The notes beneath the pieces were generated by a model that made no database searches, was not told the DNA's origin, and saw nothing but the letters and a program-made list of their open reading frames with translations. Both the position numbers and the translations under genes were made by a program. From Malacoraja senta (taxonomy: Eukaryota), in the NCBI GenBank assembly GCA_038087875.1, contig JAXLNO010003434.1, positions 62,001-126,000 on the forward strand: a DNA stretch of 64,000 nt, written 5' to 3'. This document shows, in pieces, positions 1,930 through 45,210 of the stretch (the stretch's first letter is position 1; each line of letters starts with the position of its first letter).

Positions 1930-4900
1930 GTAAACAATGCTCCTTCTACTTGTGAACTTTGAGGAAACAACAAAACTGATTCTATTTACTGTTGCACAGT
2001 ACCTGTGTTTGCCCTGGGTACATTGTCTTGGATGTATTAATTGAATGATTGAATTGAATGTATTAATAATTTTGGGTAACGGTCATTCCTGAGTTGTAAA
2101 AGCTCCTGTGGGAAGTTATATATACTATGGTTACCTTGGCAATCCATTGAACAGAGGAACTGAATACAGGGAAATAATGAACATAGAACATAGGACAATA
2201 CAGCATAGGAGCAGGTCCTTCAGTCCTTCAGTCTGAAGAAGGGTCTCGACCTGAAACGTCACCTATTCCTTTTCTCCAGAGATGCTGCCTGCCCCGCTGA
2301 GTTACTCCAGCATTTTGTGTCTACCTTCGGCCCACAATGTCTGTGCCGAACAAAATAAACTAATCTCCTCTACCTGTATGTGATCTGTATCCGGCCATTC
2401 CCTGCCTATCTATGTACCTATCTAAAAGCCTCTGAAATGTAACTGTTATATCTGCCACCACCATCACCACCACTGGCAGCGCGTTACAGATGTCCACCAC
2501 CCTCCACATAAAACAACTTGCTCCGCTCATCTCCTTTGAACATTGCCTCTCCAACCTTAAAGTGATGTTCTCTGGTCTTCAACATTTCCACCCTGGGAAA
2601 AAGGTTCTGGCTGTCCACTCTGTCTGTGCCTCTTACCATGTTGTGCACTTTCATCAGGTCTCCCTTCAACCTCCAGTATACAAGAGAAAACAATCCATGT
2701 TTGTCCAATCTGTTCTTGCACTAATACCTCAGACAGAATTCAGGTAAACCGGCGATGTGCACTTTCAATAAAGAAGTGACTTCTGCATTAGTAGGTGTTC
2801 CACCTCTCCAAGATTTCCTCAGCTGGTGTTAGACAGCCACATGATGGTAAAATTCAGCCTGCATTAAATGACCAATCAATGTTGTGTTAATGTTGTTGCC
2901 ATCTTGTTGTTTGTTACATGCTTCCTGTCCTACAGACCCTATCCATTACCCCACCACCACTTCCATATAACCATATAACCATATAACCATTACAGCACGG
3001 AAAGAGGCCATCTCGGCCCTTCAAGTCCGTGCCGAACACTTTTTTTTTCTTCCCCCTTCTTTCTTCTTACTTCCCCCTAGTCCCATCTACCTGCACTCAG
3101 ACCATATCCTTCCATTCCTTTCTCGTCCATATACCCATCCAATCTATTTTTAAAGGATAAAATCGAACCTGCCTCCACCACTTCCACTGGAAGCTCATTC
3201 CACACAGCTACCACTCTCTGAGTAAAGAAGTTCCCCCTAATGTTCCCCCTAAACTTCTGTCCCTTAATTCTCAAGTCATGTCCCCTTGTTTGAATCTTCC
3301 CTACTCTCAATGGGAAAAGCTTATCCACGTCAACTCTGTCTAACCCGCTCATCATTTTAAAGACCTCTATCAAGCCCCCCCTTAACATTCTGCGCTCCAA
3401 AGAATAAAGACCTAACTTGTTCAACCCTTCTCTGTAACTTAGTTGTTGAAACCCAGGCAACATTCTAGTAAATCTCCTCTGTACTCTCTCTATTTTGTTG
3501 ACATCCTTCCTATAATTAGGCGACCAAAATTGTACTCCATACTCCAGAATTGGCCTCACCAATGCCTTGTACAATTTTAACATTACATCCCAAATTCAAT
3601 ATTCAATGCTCTGATTTATAAAGGCCAGCAAACCAAAAACTTTCTTACCACCCTATCTACATGAGATTCCACCTTCAGGGAACTATGCACAGTTATTCCT
3701 AGATCCCTCTGTTCAACTGCATTCCTCAATTCGCTACCATTTACCATGTATGTCCTATTTTGATTTGTCCTGGCGAGATGTAGCACCTCACCTTTATCAG
3801 CATTAAACTCCATCTGCCATCTTTCAGCCCACTCTTCCAAATGGCCTAAATCTCTCTGTAGACTTTGAAAATCTACTTGATTATCCACAACACCACCTAT
3901 CTTAGTATCATCTGCATACTTACTAATCCAATTTTCCACACCATCATCCAGATCATTGATGTACATGACAAACAACAGTAGACCCAACACAGACCCCTGA
4001 GGCACCCCACTGGTCACCGGCCTCCAACCTGACAAACAGCCATCCACCATTACTCTCTGGCATCTCCCATTCAGCCACTCTTGAATCCATCTTGCTACTC
4101 CACCATTAATACCCAACAATTGAATCTTCTTAACCAACCTTCCATGAGGAACATTGTCAAAGGCTTTACTGAAGTCCATATAGACAACATCCACTGCTTT
4201 ACCCTCATCAATTTCCCTAGTAACCTCTTCGAAAAATTCAAGAAGATTAGTCAAACATGACATTCCAGGCACAAATCCATGTTGACTGTTCCTAATCAGA
4301 CCCTGCTTATCCAGATGCTTATATATATTATCTCTAAGTATCCTTTCCATTAATTTGCCCACCACTGACGTCAAACTAACAGGTCTATAATAGCTAGGTT
4401 TACTCTCACAACCCTTTTTGAACAACATGCGCTGTACGCCAATCCTCCGGCACTATTCCCGTTTCTAATGACATTTGAAATATTTCTGTCATAGCCCCTG
4501 CTATTTCTACACTAACTTCCCTCACTGTCCTAGAAAATATCCTGTCAGGACCTGGAGACTTATACATTTTCATATTTTTCAAAAGTGTCCGCACCTCCTC
4601 TTCTTTGAATCTCATAGTTTCCATTGCTACTCTGCTTGTTTCCCTTAGCTCACATAATTCCATATCCTTCTCCTTGGTGAATACCGACGAAAAGAAATTG
4701 TTCAATATCTCCCCCATCTCTTTTGGCTCTGCAGATAGCTGTCCACCCTGACTCTCTAATGGACCGATTTTATTCCTTGTTATCATTTTGCTATTAATAT
4801 AGCTGTAGAAACCCTTTGGATTTACTTTCACCTTACTTGCCAAAGCAACCTCATATCTTCTTTTAGCTTTTCTAATTTATTTCTTAATATTCTTTTTACA

Positions 4901-10900: not shown

Positions 10901-13900
10901 TCAAAGTTATTGTATTGTTATCAGTTTTAGCATTAATAACTTAGTTATTTTCAGTGAATGATACAATCATACTTATTTTTGTTTATGCATTGCAGATTTA
11001 CACCATCTTGCATTTTACTACCTGTTGAACCATGGATTGAATGAGCTGCCTGAGTACAGTATGGTAGCAATGCTGGATGACCTCCAGATAGCATATTTTG
11101 ACAGCACACTAGAGCGGGCTGTTGCCAGACAGCGATGGATGGCCCAGTCTTTCCCGCAGGATCACTGGGATTCAATGGCCATCACAGTTGCAGGTTTTCA
11201 TGGGATTGTCAGAGGAAATGCTGAGATAGTCTACCAACAGCAACATGGTATCTCGAGTAAGTGTCGTGAGCGGACCTGGGGTAGACACTCAGTGATGACA
11301 CAGATGGATTTTGTTTTAGTTTTGTTGCTGTCACATGATTCTCTGATACACTTTTTTTGCATGTTAGTCAATCACATCAAAGAAAACTATTCATAAATAC
11401 AATCAAACCAAACTCGTACAATAGGTAGAGCAAAGAGTGCAGAATGTAGTTCTCAGCTTTGTAAGGCACCAGTGCCAGAGACAAAGTCCAGTGTCTACAA
11501 TGGGATTGAGGTGAACCCTAGCATAAGGGAGGACTGTTCAGAAACCTGATAACATAGGGGAGGAAACAGTTACTGAGTCTGGTGGTGCACGCTTTAATGC
11601 TTACGTACCTTCTGCAGGAAGAAGAAGGAATGACCAGAGCGGGATGAATCTTTGATTATGTTGTCTGCTTTCCTGAGCCAGTTGAAATATAGATGGATTC
11701 ACTGGTGGGGAATCATGTTTGTGTGATCGACTGTGCTACATCTCCACCTCTCTGCAATTTCCAGCGGTCTTGGGCAGAACTCTTTCCAAACTAAGTTGTG
11801 ATGCAACCTGTCAGTATGCTTTCTATGGCACATTTGTAGAAGTTTGTAAGAGTCATTGGAGATGCCACATTTCCTTAGTCTCCTGAGGCAGTAGGTGAAC
11901 CAGAAGCTCTCAACCTTTTTCACTTCAGCACCATTGATGCTGTTTCAGACATTTACTCCATCACATTTTGATAGAGACACGGCCCATCGTCTATATTTAA
12001 TGTGTCCTAACTGCTGAACACCCATTGATAACAGTTGGCTGGTGATAGTCACTTTATGGGTTAAGCATTTGATATTCAACACCAGTAATAAGTGGATGGA
12101 TTGGATCATCTGTTTTATTGGGCTGGAATGAGGGAGAAACCATTAGTTTACTTATAGCCTGATCACCTAGAGATGGGACCTTGATTTAAGCTGGTTGATG
12201 GTGACTATGATGTATTCCCTCAACAATAATATTCTGTTAATCCAGCATTCCCTCAATATTGGCAACAATCCACAGAGGGTGTAGCAATCCCACACAGTGC
12301 AACAGCCTTGATGTACTTCCCATCTGCATTGCCTTAACCTTCAGACTGACCTGTTGGCTCTGTAGCATTGCCCATCTGACAATGCACTCCTTCCTCTGTT
12401 CTTTATGTACGACAGTGCAGAAATCTGAGTTCTACCCTTCTGACATAGCAGAACTCCTTTAGTGTTACATCCGCAACAGTAAAGCTTCCCCCCTCAACAC
12501 TTGAGGTTAGTCCATGCACTCAGTATATAAACCATGGGTCATTGAGTCATTGCGTCACACAGCATGGAAACTGGCCCTTCTGCTCACTGAATCCACACTG
12601 ATCATCCATTGTGCTAAGATGGAGTCACAGCAAACTGCAGATGCTGCCAATCTGAATTAAAAACAAACAGGAGGAACTCAATGAGTCAGGCAGCATGCTG
12701 TGGAAAAATGGACAGAAAACATATGAGACCAGGACCATTTAGAGTGATGGGGTAGAGTGGAGAAAGCTGGAAAGAAAAGTAGTCTGTGTGGGATAGTGTT
12801 AATATGCGGGGATCACTGGTCACTGCGGACTCGGTGGGCCGAAGTAAACCTCTGAAGTAAACCTCTGAAGTAAACCTGCTCCTGTGCTGTACAGCTCTAT
12901 GTTGTGTTCTGTTATGCCTGTTTGTACCATGCTGAGAACTGATTTGTAAATTGCCTCTCCCTTCCATCCACTCTCCCCAACCAAAATTCCCCACCTCAGC
13001 CCCAGCTGTTTTCTTTGTGCAGGGTTTCTGCGGCTGTGAAGTGGACAGTGACAATTCCACTGATGGGTTTGTCAGACTGGGTTATGATGGGGAGGATGCC
13101 TGTGCTTTTGACAAGGACAGAATGCGCTGGATTGCACTACGTCCAGATTTCCAGATGCTAGCAGATCGGTGGAATATCAACACCTTCATGAACAAGTATT
13201 TCAAAGATCTCCTGGAGAAGGACCGTGTGAAGTGGCTGCTGATATATCTGGAGTGTGGACAAGAAGCACTACAGAGGAGAGGTATACGACGTACGCACTC
13301 TGACTGATGGGCCAGAGGATATCCTCTGGATAGATCAGGTGGGAAATATCATGCACGTCAGGCTGTCACTTGAGTAATTATTTAGTTTAGTTTAGAGATA
13401 CAGCTCGGAAACCCACCGACACCGCACCGAGCAGCCATGCCCGCACACTAACACTATCCTACACACACTAGGGACAATTTGCATTTATACCAATCCAATT
13501 AACCTACAAATTTGTACGTCTTTCGAGTGTGAGGGGAAACCAAAGATCTCGGATAAAACCCACGCAGGTCACAGGGAGAACGTACAAACTGCGTAAAGAC
13601 AAGCACCCGTAGTTAGTAACAAACCCAGGTCTCTGGCGCTGTAAGGCAGTAGCTCCACCGCTTCGCCACCCTGTTCTACAACGTGGGTATCAGTAAATTG
13701 TCTGGCAACGTGCCTCTTAGATGGAGCCAGTGGGTAGGAAGTGCAAGTGAAAGATAAATATTGTACCAGCGTCCTCTATCCACAGTCATATAGATATTCA
13801 AGAAATGGAGGGATATGTATCTTGGTCTTATGTTTAGCATTGACCTTGTGGCCTGAAGGGTCTGTTGCTGTGCTGATCAGAAACCCAATCAGATTCTCTA

Positions 13901-16900
13901 TTTGCCTCTATTACTCCTTGGGATGGTGACATTCAATTTCCAACAGTTCTCTGGTTGAAGAACTTCTTTCTCCCATTCCCTCTTGGAATATTTTGTGTTA
14001 TTATTCAGCAGAGATTCATGAACAAGTAGAAGCAATCATGTCTACAGTATCAATCCCAATGGTGAGTTATACTCCTCCATTGGGCCCTGCATTCTCCTTT
14101 CATCTGCGCTGTCAGTTCAAGTCTGGAGCTAAGATAAGGAGCATGTCAGTGATATTAAAACTAAATGTTTTGTTGTTTTGCCAGAAATGCAAAATGAAAA
14201 GAGAAAAGGCTGTAAACTTTGTGCAAGATAGAACTGCAGATGATGGTTTACACCGAAGATAGAAGATGTTGGAGTACCTCAGTGGGTCAGATAGCATCTC
14301 TGGGCATTCCTTCTCTCCAGAGATGCTGCCTGACCTGCTGAGTTATTCCAGCATTTTGGGTCTAGGCTGGAAACTTTGTTCAGCTGGAGAAAAAACTGAT
14401 TGGGAAAGAGGTGAGTTGCAGTGATCTTACAATTGAAGGCTTTTGTTCATGTCTTCACTGATTCTGACGCTTCCTACACTTGCAGAAACCCCTGAGGTGT
14501 TTATTGGGATTAAACGTGATGAGTCACTATCACTGAGACTCTCCTGCCTTGTCACAGGCTTCTACCCACGGGGCATCGATGTAACGTGGCTGAGAGATGG
14601 TGAGGGAGACCACGAGTCTGAATCCAGTGATGATCTGTTGCCCAATTGGGATGGGACTTACCAGCTGAAGAATACAATTCAACTGAGTAGAGAAGATGTG
14701 GCAAAATTCTCCTGTTACATCGAACATGCAACTCTGCTGCAGGGAGTCAATGTTCCACAGGGTAAGTGGCAAGTCAATGAGGCTGATCACTTGAGACAAT
14801 AAACCTCCTGGACTGAGATAACAGCCTCAACACACTCTTAACTAAACTGTGCATTTAGATTTTAGACTTTAGAGATATGGTGCAGATACAGGCCCCACAG
14901 CTCACTGAGTCCTCGCTGAACAGTGATCATCCCGTACATTTACACTAACCAACACACTGGGGACAATTTACAATTTTACCTAAGCCAAGTAACCTTCAAG
15001 CCTGTATGCCTTTGGAGTGTGGGAGGAAACCGGAGCACCCGGAGAAAACCCACGCAGTCACAGGGAGAACATACAATGTCCTTGCAGACAGCACCTGTAG
15101 TCAGGATCAAACCCAGGTCTCTGGTGCAGTAAGGCAGCAGCTCTACCGCTACGCCACTGTGCCACCCATTATTAATTTGTGGTTATCTAATTGCCCAGAA
15201 TTATTGATAGTCAATGGAATGTGGTTTTACTTTAAGAGATACAGCGCAGAAACCGGCCCTTTGGCCCACGAGTCTGCGTCAACCAGCGATCCCTGCACAC
15301 TTACATTATCGTACTTATTAGGGGACAATTTACAATTATACCAAGCCAATTAACCTACAAACCTGTATGTCTTTGGACTGAGGGAGGAAACCGGAGATCC
15401 AGGGTAAAACCCACGCAAGTCCCGGGGAGAAGGTACAAACCTCTGTACAGACGGGACCCGTAGTCAGAATTGAACCGGGTCTCTGGCGCTGTAAGGCAGC
15501 AGTTCCACCGAGTGGGCAAAGCAGAGCCAAATGGAATACAGTGTAGCAAGTGTCTGGTTTTACATTTTGGCAGTCGGAATAAAGACATAGACTATTTAAT
15601 AAATGGGGAGAGAATTCAGAAATCTGAGCTACAAAGTGGGAGTACTAGTGCAGGATTCCCAAATAGTTCATTTGCAGATTGAGTCAGTGGTAAGTAAGGC
15701 AAATGCAATGCCAGCATTCATTTAACCATATAACCATATAACAATTACAGCACGGAAACAGGCCATCTCGACCCTTCTAGTCCGTGCCGAACACGTATTC
15801 TCCCCTAGTCCCATATACCTGCGCTCAGACCATAACCCTCCATCCCTTTCCCGTCCATATAACTATCCAATTTATTTTTAAATGATAAAAACGAACCTGC
15901 CTCCACCACCTTCACTGGAAGCTCATTCCACACAGCCACCACTCTCTGAGTAAAGAAGTTCCCCCTCATGTTACCCCTAAACTTCTGTCCCTTAATTCGG
16001 GGGGACTAGAAGTTTAGGGGGGACATTTCGGGGGGACTAGAAGATAAAAACAATGATATAATGCTGAGGATTTATCGGGCACTGGTGAGGATACATTTGG
16101 AATATTGTGAGCAGTTTTGGGCTCCATATTAGAAAGGATGTGCTGGCTTTGGAGAGGGTCCAGAGGAAGTGTGTCCTGGGGATGATTGATTTAACGTATG
16201 AGGAATGTTTGAAGTCTCTGTGCCTGCGCTCGTGGGATTTAGAAGGATGAGGGGGGAATCTCTGAAACATACCAGTTATTGAAAGTCCCAGTTAGTGGAT
16301 GTGGATAGGATGTTTTCAGTAATGGGAGAGTCTAGCACAGCCTCACAATAAAAATACGTACTTTCAAAATGGAGATGAGGAGGAATTTCATTAGTCACAG
16401 GGTGGTGAATCTGTGGAATTCATTGATACAGACAATTGTGTGGGTCAAGTCATTGCATATTTTAAAGCAGAGAATGATAGGTTCTTGATTAATATGGCTC
16501 CCAAAGGTTACAGGGAGAAGGCTGGAGAATGGGATTCAGAGGTAAAAATAGATCTGCCATGACTGAATGGTGGAGTAGACTCAATGGACTGAAAGGCCTA
16601 CTTCTGCTCCAATGGTAAAAAATATTCTTATGTCACCCTTAACTCACAGATCCAAATGTAGGAAGCAAGATAGGCTGATCCTGGCCAAGGTCTCTTATCT
16701 TATTTCTTGGGCATCTAGCTAATTTTTTTATAGTAGCTAGTTGCACAAAAGGCCAATAGTGGTGCCACATCCAACCCCATTATCAGTCTGAAGTAGCAGC
16801 ACCTGTTCTGTAGCTGACTTATTTGTTCCAGTCAAAACCTCTGCAAATATCTTCACACCAGGGCCAAGCTGACATGGTTAAAATTGCTGGTCACTACAAA

Positions 16901-19900
16901 TAGACAGTAGTGTTAATGTCTGAGTGTGCCTATGTGTGTGTGTGTGCGCGCGCGTGTGTGTTTGTGTGCGCTCATGTGTGTGAGACAGAGAGAGGGGGAG
17001 AGGGAGGGAGGGAGGGAGGGAGGGAGGGAGGGAGAGAAAGAGAGTGTGTGTGTGTGTGAGAATATCAAACTCTCAGATATTGAAATATCAGCAAAGTTTA
17101 AAACCTTTGAAGTTTTATCAACTATAAGTGGGTTCACTTTTATTTGCTAAAATAACAATGGTCAACATAAGAAAATAGCCTTGTTGACCTCTACACTGCA
17201 TATAGTCATCTATTTCTGACATATGCTTGATTCTTTAAATTCATAATTAAATGCTGCAGATAAAATCTCAACGCTAATATGAACTTCAAAGATTTTTCAT
17301 TGATCTATTTAAACATCCATCGTCTGGACAATTACATAAATCTAAGACTTTGTTATTTTTATTTAGATGTGAACAATGCTAGTTTAATGTAGATAATAAA
17401 ATCATTACAGGACTTCCGGTGGGGGCGACATGCTGGAGTAGTCGCACTTTTCCACGCTCCCGACCTTTTCACCTCCAACTTTTATTACAGCTCAGTCTAA
17501 GTTTTTTAACCACCCACAAACATTTAAACATCATTGTGAGTACCTCTCTATGCTGTAAAGATGCCAAACAAAGGAAAGAAAGCGGAGCAAAAGACAGAAG
17601 ACCCGGCGGCCAGCGCCAGTATGGCCACGCTAGCAGCCATGTTAACAGAACATAAGGTATTGTTACTGGCAGAATTCAACACTGCGTTCACCAAATTGGA
17701 AACGAAGCTGGACAATATCCAGACCACTATGTTAGACCACCAACACCGTCTCTCATCATTAGAGTCTTTTGCCGCTACCACTAGCCAAGATATACGAGCT
17801 ATAACGTTAATGTTAACTACGGTGACCGAAGAGAACGCCAAGGTAAAGGCTAAGCTTATTAGCCTGGAAGGCAGGAGTTGCCGAAATAACGTAAGGATAG
17901 TGGGTCTTCCCGAGAATATCGAGGGCTCCCAAACAACAGCGTTTTTTTCTCAACTTCTGCTCGAGACTCTTGGCGAACACATACTGGAATCAACCCCGGA
18001 ACTAGACCGAGCCCACCGTACGCTAACAGCCAAGCCAAGCCCTGGTGAGAAACCCAGAGCAGTTGTGATCTGCTTTCATAGATACCAGACCCGTGAGTTC
18101 GTGGTACGTGAGGCTCGGAGGCAGAGGGGTAAGCTGAAATACAAAGATACCCCGTTCCACATTTTCGAAGACCACTGTCCCGACATAGTTGAACAACGCT
18201 TCGCGTACCGAGACGTTATGAAGGAGCTGTATAACCTGGGTTTCAAACCCTCCCTTCATTATCCAGCCAAGCTGTTCATAATGTCCGGGGAGGGAAAGAG
18301 GCGACGACTAACATCTCCCGAGGACGCTCGGGATTTCATCTCATCTCACCATCGACGCAGACCGGGACCCACAGATGACTGACTTCGTTCAGTACGTCTA
18401 TATTCGAGTGGCACAGGGGCCCGGTTAACCTATGGTTACATGGACTAACTTTAGCTTGACTGTTCCTAATAACTAGCTATGGTTAGCGTTCAGCATTGCT
18501 GATTATACTAGACCCCGGTTTCGAAATGTATGAGGCAGGTAAGGAATCACCAGGATTTGTGAATGTTTTATATCAACTTTTTCTTATATTGGTCTATGCA
18601 TAATCGTGCTTGAGGGGTCCCTCACCAGCATATGCTATAAAGCTGGGCTTAAGGGACCCACTTTGTGGTTTGTGATTTGGTCTCTGCCTTCCTGTTCTTA
18701 GCAGCTGGCCGCTAACGCTGTCAGCACCTGGCTAGTTTGCTTATACTAATCTTCATAACGAACTGTCTGGGGCTGATAAGAGCTCATTACAGCCAGGGCG
18801 GTGTTATACAAATCTTATCTTATACCTTTTTTGTTTAACAAAACATAATTGATGCCTTTAGCGCTGTGCTTTAATCCAACAGCCCAGTTTGTAATTTGCT
18901 AACTTTTCCAACGCCAACTCTCTCTTTATACTTTGTCGATTTTAAGACATACTATGCAACACCAAAGGAAGTTATTCTGGCTCCACTTACACGTTAGCCG
19001 GTTTATTTAGTATCACCATTTTGTTAATAGGCTTTGTCTTATTGTGACTATCATCATTGCTATTATTACTATAAGGGTTAGCAATGGTACTGGCAGTGCA
19101 ACCATTATGGCTATTATTTTAACCTTGCATTTACCAATGTATGTTTATCTTACTTTATTCCTACTCTGTTTTTCAAATTATTATCATCACCGTCATTATT
19201 ACTATTACTATACTTATTTTATTTCATGTTACCTTATCGACACTGAGTGACTCCATCGCTTTGGGAAGCTGTGATATAGGGAGTTAAGATCGGATATCTC
19301 CATGCGGAAGCGAGGACAACGCACCTTGGTGCAAGGGGCACTTAAGGTTCAGTTGAGACATGGGGGATCTCAGGTCTGGAGACTCAGGTTTGAAAGATGG
19401 TTAAATGATATGTGTTCCACTTGTTTGCCGTGTGTGTATGTTTTTGTTCTTGTTTTTTTTTTTTTTTTTTTTTTTGTTGTTGTTTTATTTTACTTCACAT
19501 ATATATATTCACCCCCCCCCCTCCCCCTCCACATCCCCACTCTCGGCAGCTGGCTTCGATGCGCTCTTCCGTCTCGTTTTGCAGAACTACAGCGCATTAC
19601 CCATATAGCTAAAAATGGCCAACACAAACGATACTTTTAGATTTGTCTCGTGGAACGTGAGAGGGATGGGAAGTCCTACCAAAACTGATAGGATCTTGGC
19701 CCATTTGCAACAGCTCAAAGGCGATATATTCTTTATCCAAGAGACCCACCTTCGCAACAGAGAGGTAACACGGCTTAAGAGAGGCTGGATTAGTCAACTA
19801 TTTCACTCGAAATTTAATAATAGGGCCAGGGGCACCGCTATCCTGATTCGTAAGAACATTAAGTTCGAACCACAGAAAACTGTGGAAGACCCTGCTGGTC

Positions 19901-22900
19901 GCTTTGTCATGGTGTCGGGCAAATTGCAAGACACACCTGTCATATTGGCATGCATTTATGGACCCAACTGGGATGACAGCTCATTTATAACTAAATTTTT
20001 TACATCTCTCCCAAATATTGAAAATCACCATGTCATTGTGGGTGGAGATTTTAATCTGGTCCAAGATCCTATACTGGATAGATCTTCGAATAAAGCCTCT
20101 ACTTTAACTAAATCCGGTAAGACTCTGCATGTTCTCGCCAAACAACTGGGGCTCACAGATCCATGGAGATTTATATTCCCCACGACTAAATTATTTTCAT
20201 TTTTCTCCCACGTACATCGTATGTTTACCCGTATAGACTTCTTTCTTTTAGATAATAGATTGCTTTCCAAAATCAAATCCAGTGAGTACCATAGCATCGT
20301 AATATCAGATCATGCTGCGACCTCCCTTGATCTTCATTTTCGTAAACGAACTAACCCCTTTAAGTGGAGGTTCAACTCCTCATTATTAGCAGAGGCTCAC
20401 TACATGCAATTCTTGCACTCCCAAATCACCCTATATTTTGAGCTGAATGACTCGCCGGACATAGAAAGAGGTATACTTTGGGAAGCTTCAAAAGCCTATA
20501 TTAGGGGCCAACTCATTTCCTTTATCTCCAACCTGAAAAGAACGGAGACGTTCCAAACGGCAGATCTGTTACAAAAAATAAAGGACATTGATGACAAATA
20601 TGCATCTGACCCAAACCCTAATCTCTATAGAGAACGCCTTAGGCTACAAACAGACTTTGACCTCATATCCATTAATAAAGCCAAACTACGACTGCTTAAA
20701 TCTAGGCAAATACTTTTTTGAATCTGGGGATAAAGCTGAAAAGCTTTTGGCCCATCAGGCCAGAACAGATGCGCCTTCACGGTTAATTCCAGCCATTAGA
20801 TCCAGCTCAGGGGAGACTCATACTGATCCTCTCAGAATTAATGAAGCATTTGCTAAATTCTACACTGAACTATACACTTCCGACTGTCCCCCCACTGCAG
20901 GTGACATGTTCAGTAGTATGACGCTTCCCCGAATAGACGAAGAAGCCATGAGAGACTTGGGTGGTCCCATAACTGTAGCTGAGGTCCAAGCAGCCATCAC
21001 ATCGCTGCAAAGCGGAAAGTCACCCGGCCCTGACGGCTTCTCTGTAGAATATTACAAAGCTTTCTCTGACCTCCTTGCATCAGTCCTGAGAGACATGTAC
21101 AACGAGGCGTTTTTAAATCGTCGCCTACCGCCCACCTTGTCGTGGGCTACCATCTCCCTAATTCTTAAAAAGGAGAAAGATCCCCTGCTTTGTGGTAGCT
21201 ATAGACCAATCTCACTCCTGAATGTGGACCTCAAAATCCTTTCTAAAGCCCTTGCGCTTCGTCTTCAGCGAGTGATGCCCTCTATTATCTCGTTGGATCA
21301 AACAGGGTTTATACCTGGTCGACAGTCTTCCCATAATACTAGGCGTCTCCTTAACATCATTCACTCTTCGAGTAATGAGACCCCGGAGATGGTGGTCTCC
21401 CTCGATGCCGAAAAGGCCTTCGACAGGGTCGAGTGGAGGTACCTATATGAAGCGATGGATAGGTTTGTCCTCGGTAACAGTTTTATTCTCTGGGTGAGCC
21501 TATTATATTCATCCCCGGTGGCTTCAGTACAAACAAACGACATACTGTCGCCCCACTTCACACTTCAGAGAGGTACCAGACAGGGTTGCCCGTTATCTCC
21601 ACTCTTGTTTGATGTTGCGATAGAACCCCTGGCGGTCTGGTTACGCGCAGAGAAGGGCTTTAAAGGTATTACACGGTTTGACACAACTCATAAAGTCTCA
21701 TTGTATGCGGATGACCTGCTCCTGTTCATCTCGAACCCAGTCAGTTCTCTCCCTGTGATTATGAATATTTTAGAACGGTTTGGTGCATATTCTGGTTATA
21801 AACTTAACTACCAAAAGAGTGAGCTATTACCGATTAACTTACCGGCTAAGCAGCTCCCTCGCTCTTTAACCTCATTCAAAAGGGCAGAGGATGGGTTTCG
21901 CTATCTCGGCGTTTTTATCACAATTCCCTTATCTGATATGTTCCGCACAAACTTTTTGCCTCTGGTTGAGAAAGCCGAAAAAGATTTTGATCGCTGGTCA
22001 GTCTTACCACTATCCCTCGTGGGCCGGATAAATCTGGTTAAGATGGTTGTCCTACCCAAATTCCTGTATCTTTTCCAGCATGTCCCCATACTTATCACCA
22101 AATCTTTTTTTGACAAATTAGAAAGGACAATATCTAAATTCTTATGGGGTAGCAAACCGGTCAGAATCCGAAAGGCGATACTGCAGTCGCCTAAGAGTGA
22201 TGGCGGTTTGGCCCTCCCTGATTTTAGGCGATACTACTGGGCAGCTAACTTGCAAAAACTCCTGTATTGGATGAATGATGATTGCGAGCACCCACCGATC
22301 TGGGTATATATGGAAAAGGCGAGTTCACGTCTCCCATTGCGGTCTGTCCTATGCTCCCAACTCCCCCTTTCTATAACATCTGTGGGTGCAGGCCCAATTG
22401 TGTCCCTTTCGCTCAAGATATGGAGTCAATTTAGGAAAAACCGGTTTACAGGGTCCTTCCATCTTGACCCCACTGCTTAAAAATCACATTTTTAAACCTT
22501 CAAGTATAGACCACGCATTTAAAACCTGGCATAGTAATGGCATCAGTAGTATTAAAAACCTATATAAGGATGGTATCTTCTCATCTTTCGCGGCGCTCTC
22601 GTCTAACTACAACCTCCCAAACTCCCACCTTTTTCGGTTTTTCCAGATTAGGGATTTTGTGAGGAAGACATTTCCCTACTTCCCAAATCGCCCTCCTGAA
22701 CCCCTGACTGATATCATCTTAGCTTTAGACCCCAATCGGAAGAAATGCATCTCTATTTTGTATAATTTGCTAGGGTCGGTTTTATTGAAACCTCATACCT
22801 CATTAAAAGCTGCGTGGGAGGGAGAGCTGAATACGAAATTAACAGACCAGCAATGGGACTCTGCCTTGGATTTGATCCACTCTTCTTCCATATGCGCTCG

Positions 22901-23625
22901 TCATGGCCTAATCCAATGCAAAGTCCTTTACAAAGTCCACTATACAAATGCAAGATTAGCTAGAATGTACCCAGCTGTCAATGACACCTGTAACAGATGT
23001 AGTCAATCTCCTGCCAACCATAGCCACATGTTTTGGTCTTGCCCTAAGCTAGCAGCCTTTTGGAGGAGTGCTTTTGAATTGATAAGCAGAGCTTACGACC
23101 AGACTATTCTTCCAAATCCAATGTCAGCCATTTTCGGTACCCCTCCCAATACCAACCTCTCTGTTGCGGTGAAACGGGTCCTAGCTTTTACAACCTTGTT
23201 AGCCCGGAGACTGATCTTGCTTAGTTGGAGGCTCACCTGTCCCCCGACACACGCCCGTTGGATTAAGGAGGTGCTTTACAATCTGAAACTTGAAAAACTT
23301 AGGTTCTCTCTCAAAGGCTCTACCAAGACATTCCTAGATACATGGAACCCTTTCTTTGAACTGGTTAACTCTCTTACCTTGTCCCCGGACTCGGAAGAGG
23401 ACTGAGTGTTCTCCATCATCGTTTTGTTCTACAGCAGCTGCTTTCCCCTTAATCCCCCCTCCCTACAATTGTTTATTTAGATATATATGTATATATATAT
23501 ACTTTTTTTTTAAATTTTCATTTTATTTTATATATTTATATATAAACAACACTCACATACGTACACATCCGCACACAAATGGTAGAATAGACGAAACAAA
23601 ATGTGCTATATAAAAGAAATAAAAA

Positions 23626-23675
<50 letters not shown>

Positions 23676-24222
23676 TTTTTATTTCTTTTATATAGCACAT
23701 TTTGTTTCGCCTATTCTACCATTTGTGTGTGGATGTGTACGTATGTGAGTGTTGTTTGTCCCCGTTTGGCTCCGACCTGACTTGGGTGGGTTGAAGGTGG
23801 GTATGGGTAAAGGTTTTGAGGATCGCTTACATACTGTTGTACAATTATGCCTTGATTATTACTGTCTGTTATTATTGTATGTATGTTAATTGCCGTGAAA
23901 TTCAAATAAAAAGATTAAATTCAAAAAAATAAAATCATTACAATGTCGTTATTGATCAATAAATGTTTAAAATGCCCTATATCTGCCAACAGAGAGGGCA
24001 GCGAAAGAAGATATAAAGATTAGGATCGTGACTGGAGCTGTAATCGTTCCTCTTATTCTCCTGGGGATCATCCTTGGAATTGGTTGCTGGAAGAAGAGGA
24101 AAAGGAGAAAAATTCTCAATGAACAGGGACCAGCTGACAACAGCAGAGACCAGGAGAGGACTGCAGTGACCATGAAGCACAACCAGCTTCCGTTGGGAAG
24201 CAGAGGAGGTCTACCGGAATGA
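1878..24222 (+). CDS. Non-classical MHC class I-like heavy chain gene, join(1878..1929,10996..11256,13006..13281,14486..14761,23993..24222), 364 aa
   Basis: Five exons, all phase-1 GT-AG introns, lengths 52+261+276+276+230=1095 nt, open throughout; domain order leader-alpha1-alpha2-alpha3(C1-set Ig)-TM-cytoplasmic tail. Confidence 0.8.
2233..2260 (+). ncRNA. Minimal type I hammerhead ribozyme motif in a Penelope-derived tail
   Basis: CTGAAGA-A-GGGT-CTCG-ACCT-GAAAC-GTC: full core, stem II with one G-U pair, palindromic ACGT helix III; helix I only 2-3 bp. Confidence 0.55.
2963..5821 (-). mobile_element. 5'-truncated CR1 LINE with near-complete, frameshifted ORF2 (APE endonuclease + RT)
   Basis: ORFs 5496-5825 (VAISETWL, GGVALL), 4877-5383, 4406-4843, 3616-4428 (PQGS, YADD), 3077-3583; (TTATATGG)n 3' tail; possible 9-bp TSD ccaccactt 2954-2962 / ccacgactt 5822-5830. 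Confidence 0.93.
6500..7045. repeat. Cluster of Penelope-derived tail repeats in both orientations
   Basis: Several gaaggaactgcagatgctgg..gctggagtaactcag..ggcagcatc units. Confidence 0.75.
6956..6983 (+). ncRNA. Minimal type I hammerhead ribozyme motif, best-preserved copy
   Basis: CTGAAGA-A-GGGT-CTCG-ACCC-GAAAC-GTC; all core nucleotides, perfect 4-bp stem II, GUC cleavage triplet. Confidence 0.65.
7115..7163. repeat. C-rich tract (G-quadruplex-prone on the minus strand)
   Basis: Multiple C4-C9 runs separated by single A/T. Confidence 0.7.
7486..9890 (-). mobile_element. Decayed Tc1/mariner transposon with IR/DR-type long TIRs, interrupted by an L2 LINE
   Basis: TA|ctgtgacctccataatg left end; internal direct repeat ccataatgtttsggaca; inverted copy of the inner TIR at ~9806-9890; transposase remnants VFWSDDTK (8287-8487) and WPSQSPDLN (7887-8117). 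Confidence 0.9.
8744..9630 (+). mobile_element. 5'-truncated L2-clade LINE nested in the Tc1 transposase
   Basis: KTEVILFG..SRLDYCN..LQLVQNAAARL..LHWLPV..RAFSVAAP; one TGG>TAG stop at 9355-9357; aataaag(tta)n tail; Tc1 sequence resumes on both sides. Confidence 0.9.
10491..10805 (+). mobile_element. tRNA-derived V-SINE (HE1-like)
   Basis: Degenerate A/B boxes, V-domain-like core, CR1-like tail gggcctgtttcc..(actaa)n. Confidence 0.8.
10996..11256 (+). CDS. Exon 2, MHC class I alpha1 domain
   Basis: ttgcag|AT acceptor, A|GTAAGT donor, 261 nt; DLHHLAFYY..LPEYSMVAMLDDLQIAYFDS..RQRWM..DHWD carries class I alpha1 motifs (H3, DD, FDS, W51, W60). Confidence 0.9.
11330..11945 (-). mobile_element. 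Rex1/Babar LINE 3' fragment in intron 2
   Basis: KVESF..LRRLRK remnants, homologous to 46020-46755. Confidence 0.7.
13006..13281 (+). CDS. Exon 3, MHC class I alpha2 domain
   Basis: ccccag|CT acceptor (in-frame alternative AG at 12998-12999), G|GTATAC donor, 276 nt; Q96, GC101, GYDGED, W133, W147, W167, Y171, LQRR. Confidence 0.92.
13381..13673 (-). mobile_element. tRNA-derived V-SINE in intron 3
   Basis: Head ggtggcgaagcgg..gggtttgtt, core, (tttag)n tail. Confidence 0.85.
14486..14761 (+). CDS. Exon 4, MHC class I alpha3 (C1-set Ig) domain
   Basis: ttgcag|AA acceptor, G|GTAAGT donor, 276 nt; LSCLVTGFYPRGIDVTW..LLPNWDGTYQL..FSCYIEH. Confidence 0.95.
14855..15510 (-). mobile_element. Two tandem V-SINE copies (about 14855-15165 and 15228-15510)
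   Basis: Each has the ggaggaaaccggag core and an accc(g/a)ggtctctgg B-box region. Confidence 0.8.
15510..16600 (+). mobile_element. Old CR1 fragment split by a younger antisense CR1 3' end (15725-15997)
   Basis: Host CR1 reads through on both sides; insert has the same ccatataa tail and body as 2963-3260. Confidence 0.75.
16925..17058. repeat. Compound microsatellite (TG)n-(CG)n-(TG)n, (GA)n/(GGAG)n
   Basis: Direct reading. Confidence 0.9.
17561..18382 (+). CDS. L1 ORF1p (coiled coil + RRM/CTD), 273 aa, intact
   Basis: LEGRSCRNNVRIVGLPE, LDRAHR, PRAVVICFHRY, IFED, YPAKL motifs. Confidence 0.88.
   Translation: MPNKGKKAEQKTEDPAASASMATLAAMLTEHKVLLLAEFNTAFTKLETKLDNIQTTMLDHQHRLSSLESFAATTSQDIRAITLMLTTVTEENAKVKAKLISLEGRSCRNNVRIVGLPENIEGSQTTAFFSQLLLETLGEHILESTPELDRAHRTLTAKPSPGEKPRAVVICFHRYQTREFVVREARRQRGKLKYKDTPFHIFEDHCPDIVEQRFAYRDVMKELYNLGFKPSLHYPAKLFIMSGEGKRRRLTSPEDARDFISSHHRRRPGPTDD
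19615..23405 (+). pseudogene. L1 ORF2 (APE endonuclease, RT, C-terminal Cys-rich domain) with two frameshifts
   Basis: VSWNVRG, IQETH, GGDFN, SDH; QGCPLSP, YADD; CNRC..H..FWSC; frame changes at ~20708-20719 and ~22436-22442; no in-frame stop along the repaired reading path. Confidence 0.92.
23544..23757. repeat. 214-bp near-perfect AT-rich palindrome
   Basis: 87-bp arms (23544-23630, 23671-23757) with 2 mismatches around a self-complementary (TA)20. Confidence 0.95.
23993..24222 (+). CDS. Exon 5, connecting peptide, transmembrane helix and cytoplasmic tail with stop
   Basis: caacag|AG acceptor in phase with alpha3; ERAAKEDIKIR-IVTGAVIVPLILLGIILGIGCW-KKRKRRK..GLPE*. Confidence 0.75.
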
Positions 24223-26967: not shown

Positions 26968-28100
26968 TACATAGATACATAGAAAATAGGTGCAGGAGTA
27001 GGCCATTCGGCCCTTCGAGCCTGCACCGCCATTCAATATGATCATGGCTGATCATCCAACTCAGTATCCCGTACCTGCCTTCTCTCCATACCCCCTGATC
27101 CCTTTAGCCACAAGGGCCACATCTAACTCCCTCTTAAATATAGGCAATGAACTGGCCTCAACTACCCTCTGTGGCAGAGAGTTCCAGAGATTCACCACTC
27201 TCTGTGTGAAAAAGTTTTTCCTCATCTCGGTCTTAAAGGATTTCCCCCTTATCCTTAAGCTGTGACCCCTTGTCCTGGACTTCCCCAACATCGGGAACAA
27301 TCTTCCTGCATCTAGCCTGTCCAACCCCATAAGAATTTTGTACGTTTCTATAAGATCCCCTCTCAATCTCCTAAATTCTAGCGAGTATAAGCCAAGTCTA
27401 TCCAGTCTTTCTTCATATGAAAGTCCTGACATCCCAGGAATCAGTCTGGTGAACCTTCTCTGCACTCCCTCTATGGCTATAATGTCCTTCCTCAGATTTG
27501 GAGACCAAAACTGTACGCAATACTCCAGGTGTGGTCTCACCAAGACCCTGTACAACTGCAGTAGAACCTCGCTGCTCCTATACTCAAATCCTCTTGCTAT
27601 GAAGGCCAACATACCATTCGCTTTCTTCACTGCCTGCTGCACCTGCATGCCTACTTTCAATGACTGGTGTACCATGACACCCAGGTCTCGCTGCACCTCC
27701 CCATTTCCTAATCGGCCACCATTTAGATAATAGTCTGCCTTCCCGTTTTTGCCACCAAAGTGGATAACCTCACATTTATCCACATTATACTGCATCTGCC
27801 AAACATTTGCCCACTCACCCAGCCTATCCAAGTCACCTTGCAGTCTCCTAGCATCCTCCTCACAGCTAACACTGCCCCCCAGCTTAGTGTCATCCGCAAA
27901 CTTGGAGATGTTGCTTTCAATTCCCTCGTCCAGATCATTATATAAAATTGTAAATAGCTGGGGTCCCAGCACTGAGCCTTGCGGTACCCCACTAGTCACT
28001 GCCTGCCATTGTGAAAAGGACCCGTTTACTCCTACTCTTTGCTTCCTGTTTGCCAGCCAGTTCTCTATCCACATCAATACTGAACCCCAATACCGTGTGA
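26968..28100 (-). mobile_element. Young 5'-truncated CR1 LINE
   Basis: Uninterrupted 338-codon ORF 27061-28077 (PQGSVLGP, FADD, HLEYCVQFWSP), catagatacatag tail. Confidence 0.93.
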
Positions 28101-43760: not shown

Positions 43761-44167
43761 CGCCCCTAAGTATAGATATAGGGAAAGATACAGCAGCCTG
43801 AAAACCGTGACAACCAGATTCAAGAATAGTCTCTTCTCAGCAATCATCAGGCTCTTCAACACCACACAAAACTAACTTCAGCATCTATGATCATCTACGG
43901 ACTGTCTTTGAATGTAATATGAATTTAGTTTTTTGCACTATTATGATAGTCCAGTATTACAGTTATTAATTTATTGTTATATTGGTTGTTTTATATTATC
44001 TCTGTGTTATTGCAGTTACATGCAGGTGAAGCTGCAGCAAGTCAGAATTTTGTTGTTCTATTGTTGATACATATGACAATTAAACAACTCTTACCTCACA
44101 TTTGATTTTGGGTAAAGCTCACTCCATATTACCCCCACCATACACTCAGGAAAAGTACAAGGAACAA

Positions 44168-45210
44168 GTACATGTTTAAGAAAGAACTGCAGATGCTGGA
44201 AAAATCCAAGGTAGACAAAAATGCTGGAGAAACTCAGCAGTGAGGCAGCATCTATGGAGCAAAGGAATAGGTGACGTTTTGGGTCGAGACCCTTCTTCAG
44301 ACTGATATGGGGGTGTGGGGCGGGAAGAAGAAAGGAAGAGGTGGAAATAGTAGGCTGTGGGAGAGCTTCGAAGGGGAGGGGAAGGAGGGAGAAAGCAAAG
44401 ACTACCTGAAAATGGAGGTCAATGTTCATACCGCTGGGGTGTAAACTACCCAAGCGAAAAATGATATGCTGCTCCTCCAATTTGCGGAGGGTCTTACTCT
44501 GGCCGTGGAGGAGACCCAGGACAGAAAGGTCGGATTCTGAATGGGAGGGGGAGTTGAAGTGCTGAGCCACTGGGAGATCAGGTTGGTTAATGCGGACTGA
44601 GCGGAGGTGTTGGGCGAAGCGATCGCCAATCCTGCGCTTGGTCTCACCGATGTAGAGCAGTTGACACCTAGAGCAGCGGATGCAATAGATGAGGTTGGAG
44701 GAGGGGCAGGTGAACTTCTGCCTCACTTGGAAAGACTGCTTAGGCCCTTGGATGGAGTCAAGGGGGGAGATAAAGCGACAAGTGTAGCATTTCCTGCGGT
44801 TGCAAGTGAAAGTGCCAGGGGAGGGGAAGGTTAAGGAACGGGGCTTCTTCTCTTCGACTGCAGATGAGGCTCTCAGCAGGGTCTCTTCTATATCTCGTTG
44901 CTCCGCTCTCACTCCCCATCCCCCCACTCGTGACAAGTTCCCCTTGTCCTCACATTACACCCTACCAGCCGTCACATACAACAGATAATCCTCCGACATA
45001 TTCGCCACCTCCAACGGGATCCCATCACTGGCCACATCTTCTCATCTTCTCCCCTTTCAGCTTTCTGAAGAGACTGCACCCTCTGTAACTCCCTGGTCAA
45101 TTTGTCCCTTCCCACCCAAACCACTCCCTCCCCTGGTACTTTCCCTTGCAACTGCAGGAAATGCTACACTTGTCGCTTTACCTCCCCCCTTAACTCCATC
45201 CAAGGACCTA
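44168..45210 (-). mobile_element. Penelope-like retroelement 3' part (GIY-YIG endonuclease + tail) with inverted 5' segment
   Basis: ORF 44091-44936: CNRRKCYTC..NLIYCIRC..LYIGET.R..DRF.QH..VAQHF..E..I.RLGSL.P.GMN; hammerhead-type tail at 44273-44300; upstream part present on + at ~44880-45210. Confidence 0.9.

What the first reader, a model, noticed from the sequence alone, without database searches (positions are those of the whole stretch)
10996..13281. Non-classical MHC class I with a hydrophobic, CD1-like groove in a probable cartilaginous fish
Seen: by eye alignment to HLA-A2 numbering, the nine peptide-terminus anchors (Y7, Y59, Y/R84, Y123, T143, K146, W147, Y159, Y171) read F, H, Q, A, L, R, W, L, Y, so only W147 and Y171 are kept. 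Groove-facing positions are almost all apolar: L5, F7, M24, I33, M63, V67, F70, I73, V74, I80, V81, V95, V114, L116, L143, L159. Several beta2m-contact and structural residues (H3, D29, W60, Q96, D119, G120, D122, alpha3 P235/D238/Q242) are retained. Known: this pattern marks lipid or small-ligand binders such as CD1; described shark lineages include classical UAA and non-classical UBA/UCA/UDA/UEA, and from memory a CD1-like UFA. Inference: a beta2m-associated, non-peptide-presenting class I molecule, either a known divergent lineage or an undescribed one.
Basis: partly seen in the sequence, partly recalled or inferred. Interest (0 to 1): 0.85.

Follow-up and report, generated by a model that had tools for sequence, protein, structure and literature searches.

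The report
Skate non-classical MHC-I, sister of UGA

Summary
Window 10996-13281 holds the alpha1 and alpha2 exons of a four-exon MHC class I-like gene; alpha3 is at 14486-14761 and the TM/tail exon at 23993-24222. The 346-codon frame is open and the splice sites are canonical.

Only W147 and Y171 of the nine peptide-terminus anchors remain. At 44 groove positions 66% of residues are apolar, against 43-48% in classical-like sequences.

The genome is a skate, collinear with Leucoraja erinacea. The gene belongs to a single-copy lineage ("X") found in 15 sequences from 14 shark and ray species. It forms a clade with 100/100 support that follows the species tree.

X is sister to shark UGA (PDB 9ch4, 39% identity; support 93/85). 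It is distinct from UFA (PDB 8gm8) and from classical genes. The sawfish gene taken to be the ortholog lies in the published MHC-Ib cluster, and the little-skate ortholog shares a 127-kb contig with a UGA copy.

Unlike UGA, X has no tyrosine sorting motif. It has an invariant, unpaired Cys99 on the groove floor. This skate alone has Arg at the canonical Cys164, and independent reads show no difference there.

Lipid or hydrophobic-ligand presentation with beta2m is inferred, not shown. Whether X is the published "UDA" could not be tested.

The parts
10996..11256 (+). alpha1 exon (phase 1 at both ends); encodes xLHHLAFYY...QQQHGIS
   Evidence: Sequence and splice sites; translation; Pfam MHC_I; 95% identical to L. 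erinacea XP_055486430.1 alpha1; E 3e-21 to PDB 9ch4
13000..13281 (+). alpha2 exon. The acceptor at 12999/13000 is the one implied by NCBI batoid protein models (TPA-VFFVQ). The alternative in-frame acceptor at 13005/13006 gives the shark-like length.
   Evidence: Pfam MHC_I 53 bits; best PDB sequence match is MR1 at E 1.5e-14, with 9ch4 at 4.5e-11
13029..13031 (+). Cys99 codon (TGC), at a groove-floor position; invariant in all 15 X orthologs and without an invariant partner cysteine
13053..13061 (+). N-S-T glycosylation sequon in the alpha2 loop. The usual N86 sequon is absent: position 86 is H/R/S in X and N in UGA and classical-like sequences.
13224..13226 (+). Arg codon (CGT) at canonical Cys164. 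All 15 orthologs have Cys, and L. erinacea keeps Cys164.
   Evidence: Contigs of two runs cover 13203-13300 and list no difference at 13224.
14486..14761 (+). alpha3 exon (Ig C1-set), acceptor ttgcag, donor gtaagt
17409..23928 (+). LINE (L1-like) insertion in the alpha3-TM intron; absent from L. erinacea
   Evidence: Endonuclease and RT ORFs; collinearity break against L001
23993..24222 (+). Connecting peptide, transmembrane and cytoplasmic exon, ending in stop TGA; acceptor ccaacag; the tail has no YxxPhi motif
   Evidence: (co-linear with the L. erinacea protein's C-terminus)

Best explanation
The finding is the skate ortholog of an old, single-copy, MHC-linked non-classical class I lineage of elasmobranchs, here called X. 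NCBI names its members 'MR1-like'. X is the sister paralog of the shark lineage UGA.

Shown: the gene encodes a type I membrane heavy chain (alpha1, alpha2, alpha3, TM, and a basic tail without tyrosine) that is predicted with confidence to adopt the class I fold.

Shown: its groove has lost seven of the nine residues that clamp peptide termini. It is lined almost entirely by apolar and aromatic side chains over small floor residues (G69, G76, G97, C99, A123). These residues have stayed essentially invariant since sharks and rays split.

Inferred: it pairs with beta2-microglobulin. It holds a conserved hydrophobic ligand, most likely a lipid tail or another greasy small molecule, as reported for UGA and UFA. 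It displays that ligand at the cell surface to T cells or related receptors.

Inferred: it samples the secretory or surface route rather than late endosomes, because it lacks the YQNI sorting motif of UGA.

Open: in this skate the C101-C164 disulfide cannot form because position 164 is Arg, so this species' copy may be less stable or functionally shifted.
For: Gene model: 346-codon open frame with canonical splice sites.

Orthology: 90% protein identity to L. erinacea XP_055486430.1, and locus collinearity at about 87-92% nucleotide identity including introns.

Lineage: 15 sequences from 14 species, one gene per species, 54-72% identical, then a drop to 36% or less for full-length class I. The careful ML tree gives X 100/100, UGA-like 100/100 and X+UGA 93/85. 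Within X, batoids form a supported clade (99/96) holding the window, and the shark orders group as expected, though shark monophyly itself is weakly supported (82/31).

Structure: AlphaFold2 model of the L. erinacea ectodomain has pLDDT 87. Its best PDB match is 9ch4 'shark nonclassical MHC class I, UGA' with Z 28.2, rmsd 1.8 A over 267 residues, 39% identity.

Groove: anchors and composition as.

MHC linkage: the one Pristis gene named 'MR1-like' (taken to be P0133) lies between B2M/BRD2 and COL11A2/RXRB among MHC-Ib genes. X and a UGA copy sit on one 127-kb L. erinacea contig with consecutive accession numbers.

Ligand class for the relatives: PMC12562908 reports, as a personal communication, that crystal structures and mass spectrometry indicate UFA and UGA bind lipids like those of CD1d.

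Constraint: alpha1 and alpha2 exons differ from L. erinacea at 2.6% of sites, against roughly 8-13% in introns. dN/dS is 0.57.
Against: No ligand, beta2m pairing or expression was shown; no RNA run was available.

No leader exon was identified in the 11 kb upstream, and the L. erinacea model is also 'partial'.

The window has Arg at Cys164, plus F2L and P47A at sites that are invariant or nearly so in X.

dN/dS of 0.57 overall, and 0.87 in alpha3, is only weak constraint on the skate branch.

Many groove residues are bulky aromatics that could fill the groove rather than line a cavity.
Confidence: 0.6

Rival explanations
1. The groove is filled or closed, and the molecule does not present anything. 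It would act as a ligand for NK-type or other receptors, or in a non-immune role, like HFE, FcRn, MIC or ZAG.
For: Groove-facing positions include many large aromatics: F7, Y9, Y22, F70, F113, Y118, W133, W147, Y155, F156, W167, Y171. Near-total invariance over the shark-ray split fits a fixed receptor-binding surface as well as a fixed ligand. ZAG and chicken CD1-1 score almost as well structurally as peptide binders, at Z about 25.6-25.7.
Against: Small floor and wall residues (G69, G76, G97, C99, A123, A26) are invariant, which suggests retained space. The nearest relative, UGA, is reported to hold lipid.
Confidence: 0.17
2. It binds a small metabolite in the manner of MR1, possibly using the invariant free Cys99 for covalent or tight capture.
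For: The best PDB sequence match of alpha2 is MR1 (E 1.5e-14). NCBI's automatic name is 'MR1-like'. Cys99 is invariant and unpaired on the groove floor.
Against: The defining MR1 Schiff-base lysine K43 aligns with Ala in the window. Identity to MR1 is only 29-32%. No MR1 sequence was in the trees, so orthology was not tested. The groove is more apolar than would be expected for polar ribityl-type ligands.
Confidence: 0.1
3. In this skate the gene is a decaying or already non-functional copy of lineage X.
For: C164R removes the canonical alpha2 disulfide. F2L and P47A also hit sites that are invariant or nearly so in X. No leader exon was found. No protein from this window appears in the protein database. 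dN/dS is 0.57, and 0.87 in alpha3. A 6.5-kb LINE sits in an intron. An unchecked note of this scan reports a frameshifted UGA copy elsewhere in this genome.
Against: All four exons are open with intact splice sites. There is no rate asymmetry against L. erinacea: 14 versus 13 assigned changes, p = 1. Alpha1 and alpha2 are clearly more conserved than the introns. Contigs of two further runs show no difference at the Arg codon, and their alpha2 exon has no gaps. A large elasmobranch class I clade lacks both C101 and C164, so the fold can do without this disulfide.
Confidence: 0.1
4. It is a peptide-presenting class I molecule, classical or Qa-1/HLA-E-like.
For: W147 and Y171 are kept, and the architecture is a full class I. 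Chicken peptide-binding BF2 molecules are near-top structural matches at Z about 27.
Against: Seven of nine terminus anchors are replaced, invariably, across the 12-15 orthologs with a residue at each site. Only two charged residues occur among 44 groove positions. The gene falls outside the classical-like clade.
Confidence: 0.03

Closest known systems
Shark UGA (PDB 9ch4, 'Crystal structure of shark nonclassical MHC class I, UGA', released 2026-03-18); skate members XP_032898133.1 and XP_055521885.1
   Same: Nearest solved structure: Z 28.2, rmsd 1.8 A, 39% identity. In alpha1, 40 of 81 aligned residues are identical, about 49%, at E 3e-21. Sister clade with 93/85 support. One contig holds both genes in L. 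erinacea. Shared groove residues are L5, Y9, Y22, I33, T66, G69, F70, G76, G97, A123, W133, M152, Y155, F156, L159, L160, D163 and Y171.
   Different: The clades are separate, and both genes occur in the same skates and sharks, so they are paralogs older than the shark-ray split. X has F7/H59/L143/R146/C99 where UGA has Y7/Y59/F143/K146/F99. X is 68% apolar against 50%. X has no N86 sequon. X has a long tail without tyrosine, where skate UGA has RRDYQNI.
Shark UFA (PDB 8gm8, 'Crystal structure of shark nonclassical MHC class I, UFA', released 2024-11-27); NCBI 'CD1d-like' in stingrays
   Same: An elasmobranch non-classical class I described as CD1-like and MHC-linked (PMC10751288). The alpha1 motif LPE-SM-GMLDDLQI-Y-DS is shared.
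   Different: Only about 29% identical, and a separate long-branched clade. UFA has a strongly divergent alpha2 and ends in a hydrophobic stretch with no cytoplasmic tail.
CD1 (tetrapods)
   Same: Probably works alike: an apolar groove without peptide anchors in a beta2m-type class I fold. Chicken CD1-1 scores Z 25.7.
   Different: 24% identity to a CD1b, with no phylogenetic affinity beyond a long branch. No tyrosine sorting motif. Orthology is not supported.
MR1
   Same: Best PDB sequence match for alpha2 (E 1.5e-14, ungapped over 86 residues). Source of NCBI's automatic name.
   Different: K43 is replaced by Ala. Identity is 29-32%. The groove is far more apolar.
Chicken YF1*7.1 (lipid-binding class I; PMC2998441)
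   Same: A precedent that a class I molecule close to classical ones can bind lipids in a hydrophobic groove. Structural match Z 26.5-26.6.
   Different: Avian lineage, 28-29% identity, no orthology.
Elasmobranch UDA (Almeida et al. 2020, J Immunol 204:892; not held in the library)
   Same: Described as single-copy and lying in the same MHC-Ib cluster between B2M/BRD2 and COL11A2/RXRB (PMC10751288), which also fits X.
   Different: UDA is said to occur in holocephalans too. X has no clear Callorhinchus ortholog: the best hit is 36% identity, only marginally above other lineages. The AU test does not reject X + Callorhinchus (p 0.31). Identity of X with UDA is undecided.

Membership tests
MHC class I superfamily (heavy chain) | alpha1/alpha2 MHC_I domain plus a membrane-proximal Ig C1-set domain, with the class I fold | tested here: met
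   Pfam MHC_I and C1-set. AF2 model of the 90%-identical ortholog has pLDDT 87 and Z 26-28 to many class I structures.
Classical peptide-presenting class I (UAA-type) | Conserved peptide-terminus anchors Y7, Y59, Y/R84, Y/F123, T143, K146, W147, Y159, Y171 | tested here: not met
   The window reads F, H, Q, A, L, R, W, L, Y; only 2 of 9 are kept.
Classical peptide-presenting class I (UAA-type) | High polymorphism and ubiquitous expression | not testable with these tools
   No RNA runs. Only contigs of two runs were available; they show 3 differences in the alpha2 exon.
Elasmobranch lineage X ('MR1-like' single-copy Ib) | Falls inside the clade of the 15 ortholog sequences and shares their invariant groove residues | tested here: met
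   Clade 100/100 with the window inside the batoids. All anchor-replacing residues are shared. The exception is R164 in place of the invariant C164.
UGA | Clusters with 9ch4-type sequences; Y7/Y59/K146/F99; short tail with YQNI | tested here: not met
   Sister clade, not inside it; 39% identity; residues differ; no YxxPhi motif.
UFA | Clusters with 8gm8-type sequences | tested here: not met
   The UFA-type model matches 8gm8 at rank 1. X is about 29% identical and in another clade.
UDA | Sequence identity or clade membership with the published UDA sequences | not testable with these tools
   PMC7002201 and PMC8454915 are not held. No UDA-named protein was returned by the searches.
CD1 | Orthology to CD1 and a deep lipid-binding pocket | tested here: inconclusive
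   24% identity to a CD1b, and the long branch makes placement unreliable. Pocket depth could not be measured because no model coordinates were available.
CD1 | Tyrosine-based endosomal sorting motif (as in CD1b/c/d) | tested here: not met
   No YxxPhi in the window or in the 15 orthologs.
MR1 | Lys43 forming a Schiff base with the ligand | tested here: not met
   MR1 position 43 aligns with Ala of the window.
Beta2m-associated class I | Physical pairing with beta2-microglobulin | not tested
   Contact residues are retained in the sequence.

The most novel reading that the evidence does not exclude
Lineage X may be an as-yet unnamed elasmobranch class I lineage: a third CD1-like molecule beside UFA and UGA. 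It would have the most apolar groove of the three, an invariant free thiol (Cys99) on the groove floor, and no endosomal sorting motif. Together with UGA (YQNI tail) and UFA (tail-less), cartilaginous fish would then have evolved, independently and before the shark-ray split, a division of labour between surface-route and endosome-route lipid presentation like CD1a versus CD1b/d. This skate's loss of the C101-C164 disulfide would be a natural variant for testing how such a groove is stabilised.
Probability: 0.3. Interest if true: 0.6.

Novelty: new member of a known kind. Interest (0 to 1): 0.36.

Why it matters
Sharks and rays are the oldest living vertebrates with an MHC. Whether lipid presentation of the CD1 type is as old as peptide presentation is an open question. 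Structures for two CD1-like shark lineages, UFA and UGA, are already in the PDB.

This gene shows that UGA has an equally old sister lineage. Its groove is even more apolar and strikingly invariant, and its trafficking signal differs. That bears on how many separate non-peptide presentation systems the first jawed vertebrates had.

For genome annotation, the automatic name 'MR1-like' is misleading, because the MR1 ligand-binding lysine is absent.

The value is limited. The lineage is already visible in public annotations and in a published MHC map, and may already be named (UDA). Nothing functional is shown here.

Tried and rejected
RNA evidence: no RNA run holds the stretch. The two runs laid are contigs, apparently DNA, of the same species or a close relative, so expression, the transcript start and splice joints could not be read.

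Leader exon: scans for a signal-peptide ORF with a phase-1 donor upstream found nothing convincing. The one candidate shared with L. erinacea (window 1937-2033) is conserved only at the neutral level and supplies the wrong split-codon base.

Naming: the two papers that define UDA and UEA are not held. Literature searches for UFA, UGA, UDA or the PDB codes gave only two papers with brief mentions. The supplement of PMC10751288 labels genes only 'MHC-Ib'.

Callorhinchus: a search from P0164 returned only its own multicopy family. BLAST margins and AU tests leave its relation to X open.

Other tests: the relative-rate test for accelerated decay in the window lineage was negative. Model coordinates are not exposed, so no cavity volume or Cys-Cys distances could be computed. 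No second class I gene lies in the window; the other long ORFs are retroelements.

Full report
WHAT IS THERE

The coordinates of the finding are the exact limits of two exons. Alpha1 is 10996-11256 and begins after ttgcag. It carries a split first codon and ends before gtaagt. Alpha2 ends at 13281 before gt. It starts at 13000 or 13006, both in-frame acceptors.

Downstream lie an Ig C1-set alpha3 exon (14486-14761) and one exon for the connecting peptide, membrane span and tail (23993-24222, stop TGA). I placed the start of the last exon by comparison with the little-skate protein.

Spliced together, the four exons give an uninterrupted 346-codon frame. Pfam finds MHC_I on alpha1 and alpha2 and C1-set on alpha3. 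No other class I exon lies in the 64 kb. The remaining long ORFs are retroelement reverse transcriptases, an endonuclease and a GIY-YIG domain. No leader exon could be identified.

HMMER aligns alpha1 without gaps to the solved classical shark class I 6lup. This puts Phe at Tyr7 and His at Tyr59.

In an 81-sequence alignment, the columns that read Y7, Y59, R84, F123, T143, K146, W147, Y159 and Y171 in classical-like sequences read F, H, Q, A, L, R, W, L, Y in the window.

At 44 positions that line the groove in HLA-A2, 66% of the window's residues are apolar and only two are charged (R146, D163). The numbering is from my own knowledge of that sequence. The apolar share is 50% in UGA-type, 54% in UFA-type and 43-48% in classical-like sequences, and 61% in a CD1b.

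WHOSE GENE IT IS

A search of 1.8 billion representative proteins with alpha1 found one close relative. It is XP_055486430.1 of Leucoraja erinacea, 95% identical in alpha1.

The L. erinacea locus is collinear with the window at about 87-92% nucleotide identity, introns included. The window is therefore from another skate. A 6.5-kb LINE in the alpha3-TM intron (17409-23928) is absent from L. erinacea.

Searching with the skate protein gave orthologs, one gene per species. They come from sawfish, manta, stingray, sawshark, sevengill shark, catsharks, houndshark, basking shark, zebra shark, epaulette shark and bamboo sharks, at 54-72% identity. Identity then drops to 36% or less for full-length class I. 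NCBI names all of them 'MR1-like'.

A careful maximum-likelihood tree gives this lineage, which I call X, 100/100 support. The window sits beside L. erinacea and inside a supported batoid clade. The shark orders group as expected, although shark monophyly itself is weakly supported (82/31).

RELATION TO NAMED LINEAGES

The alpha1 exon matches PDB 9ch4 at E 3e-21 and 8gm8 at 1e-11. An AlphaFold2 model of the L. erinacea ectodomain (pLDDT 87) has 9ch4 as its best structural match: Z 28.2, rmsd 1.8 A, 39% identity. The entry title is 'shark nonclassical MHC class I, UGA'.

A model of a stingray 'CD1d-like' protein matches 8gm8 best, titled 'shark nonclassical MHC class I, UFA'.

In the tree, the 9ch4-type sequences form their own 100/100 clade, which is sister to X with 93/85 support. 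The 8gm8-type clade lies elsewhere. Both X and UGA-type genes occur in the same skates and the same sharks. In L. erinacea they sit on one 127-kb contig with consecutive accession numbers. X is therefore neither UFA nor UGA, but a paralog of UGA older than the shark-ray split.

The literature held says that UFA and UGA are CD1-like, MHC-linked and single- or low-copy. It also says that crystal structures and mass spectrometry point to lipids (PMC10751288; PMC12562908, the latter as a personal communication).

The one sawfish gene named 'MR1-like', which I take to be the X ortholog P0133, is listed as MHC-Ib. It lies between B2M/BRD2 and COL11A2/RXRB, in the cluster said to hold UDA, UEA and UFA.

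Whether X is the published single-copy UDA could not be decided. The defining papers are not held. The elephant-shark class I family that might link them is only marginally closest to X, and AU tests reject nothing.

HOW IT PROBABLY WORKS

The fold, the retained beta2m and alpha3 contact residues, and the membrane anchor point to a surface heavy chain paired with beta2m.

The groove has no peptide clamps. It is apolar and keeps small residues on its floor (G69, G76, G97, C99, A123). It shares the alpha2-helix set M152, Y155, F156, L159, L160, D163 with UGA. These residues are invariant across 15 sequences, which argues for one conserved hydrophobic ligand or ligand class.

I therefore favour lipid or greasy small-molecule display, at about 0.6. 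A filled groove with a receptor-ligand role is the main rival.

Three features set X apart from UGA:
- It has no YxxPhi sorting motif in any species, whereas skate UGA ends in RRDYQNI and UFA has no tail at all.
- It lacks the N86 glycan sequon and has an N-S-T in the alpha2 loop instead.
- It has an invariant cysteine at floor position 99 with no invariant partner.

MR1-like chemistry is unlikely, because MR1's Lys43 aligns with Ala.

STATE OF THIS COPY

The canonical Cys164 is Arg (CGT, 13224-13226). All 15 orthologs have Cys. Contigs from two other runs of this or a very close species cover the codon and show no difference, so it is not an assembly error.

Two further changes, F2L and P47A, hit sites that are invariant or nearly so in X.

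Against decay:
- The frame and splice sites are intact.
- Changes are split evenly between the window and L. erinacea branches (14 versus 13).
- Alpha1 and alpha2 differ at 2.6% of sites, against roughly 8-13% in introns.
- dN/dS is 0.57 overall.
- A large elasmobranch class I clade lacks both cysteines of this disulfide, so the fold can do without it.

I put pseudogenisation at about 0.1.

VERDICT

The gene is a non-classical class I with a CD1-like apolar groove in a skate. It is not UFA but a sister of UGA, from a lineage already visible in public annotation and in a published MHC map. Function is inferred.

Novelty is that of a new member of a known kind. There is a moderate chance that the lineage itself is still unnamed.

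Noticed in passing
window 17409-23928: L1-like LINE in the alpha3-TM intron, same strand as the gene. It has endonuclease (19615-20721), RT (20588-22480) and zf-RVT (22386-23405) ORFs. It is absent from the orthologous L. erinacea locus, with about 14 bp of overlap at the junction that suggests a target-site duplication. It ends about 65 bp before the TM-exon acceptor at 23992.
   Followed up: partly
proteins P0225, P0227 (skate UGA) and P0016, P0026, P0235 (UFA-type): The three related lineages have three different C-termini. X has a long basic tail without tyrosine. Skate UGA has a short tail ending RRDYQNI (YxxPhi). UFA-type proteins end in a hydrophobic stretch with no cytoplasmic tail, which may mean a GPI anchor or no tail.
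   Followed up: partly
window 13029-13031, 13101-13103, 13254-13256: Extra cysteines in alpha2. Cys99 is invariant in lineage X. Cys124 occurs in 4 of 15 orthologs (the batoid sequences among those printed) and Cys174 in 9 of 15. With R164, this skate has four alpha2 cysteines and no canonical pair.
   Followed up: partly
window 13175-13176 and 13240: Contigs of two other runs differ from the window in the alpha2 exon. The changes are a synonymous T>C (partial), I>V at the codon starting 13176 (the L. erinacea state), and L>R at the codon 13239-13241. This is either allelic variation or a sister species.
   Followed up: no
window 3616-4428(-), 27061-28077(-), 44091-44936(-): Reverse-transcriptase fragments and a GIY-YIG (Penelope-type) ORF. 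Repeats of the 13380-13680 and 14190-14460 type reach contig depths 1000-fold above the exons in the laid runs.
   Followed up: no
Callorhinchus milii proteins P0164, P0173, P0179, P0237-P0248: The elephant shark carries a multicopy class I family: 15 database clusters, four of them on one 49-kb contig. Its best elasmobranch match is lineage X by a small margin, and its placement in the tree is unresolved.
   Followed up: partly
alignment columns 101 and 164, 45-sequence 'F10 alpha chain-like' clade (e.g. P0027, P0147-P0207): A large multicopy elasmobranch class I clade has Val/Ile at position 101 and Leu/Phe/Ser at 164, so it lacks the alpha2 disulfide altogether. It may be the multicopy UEA lineage; this was not verified.
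   Followed up: no
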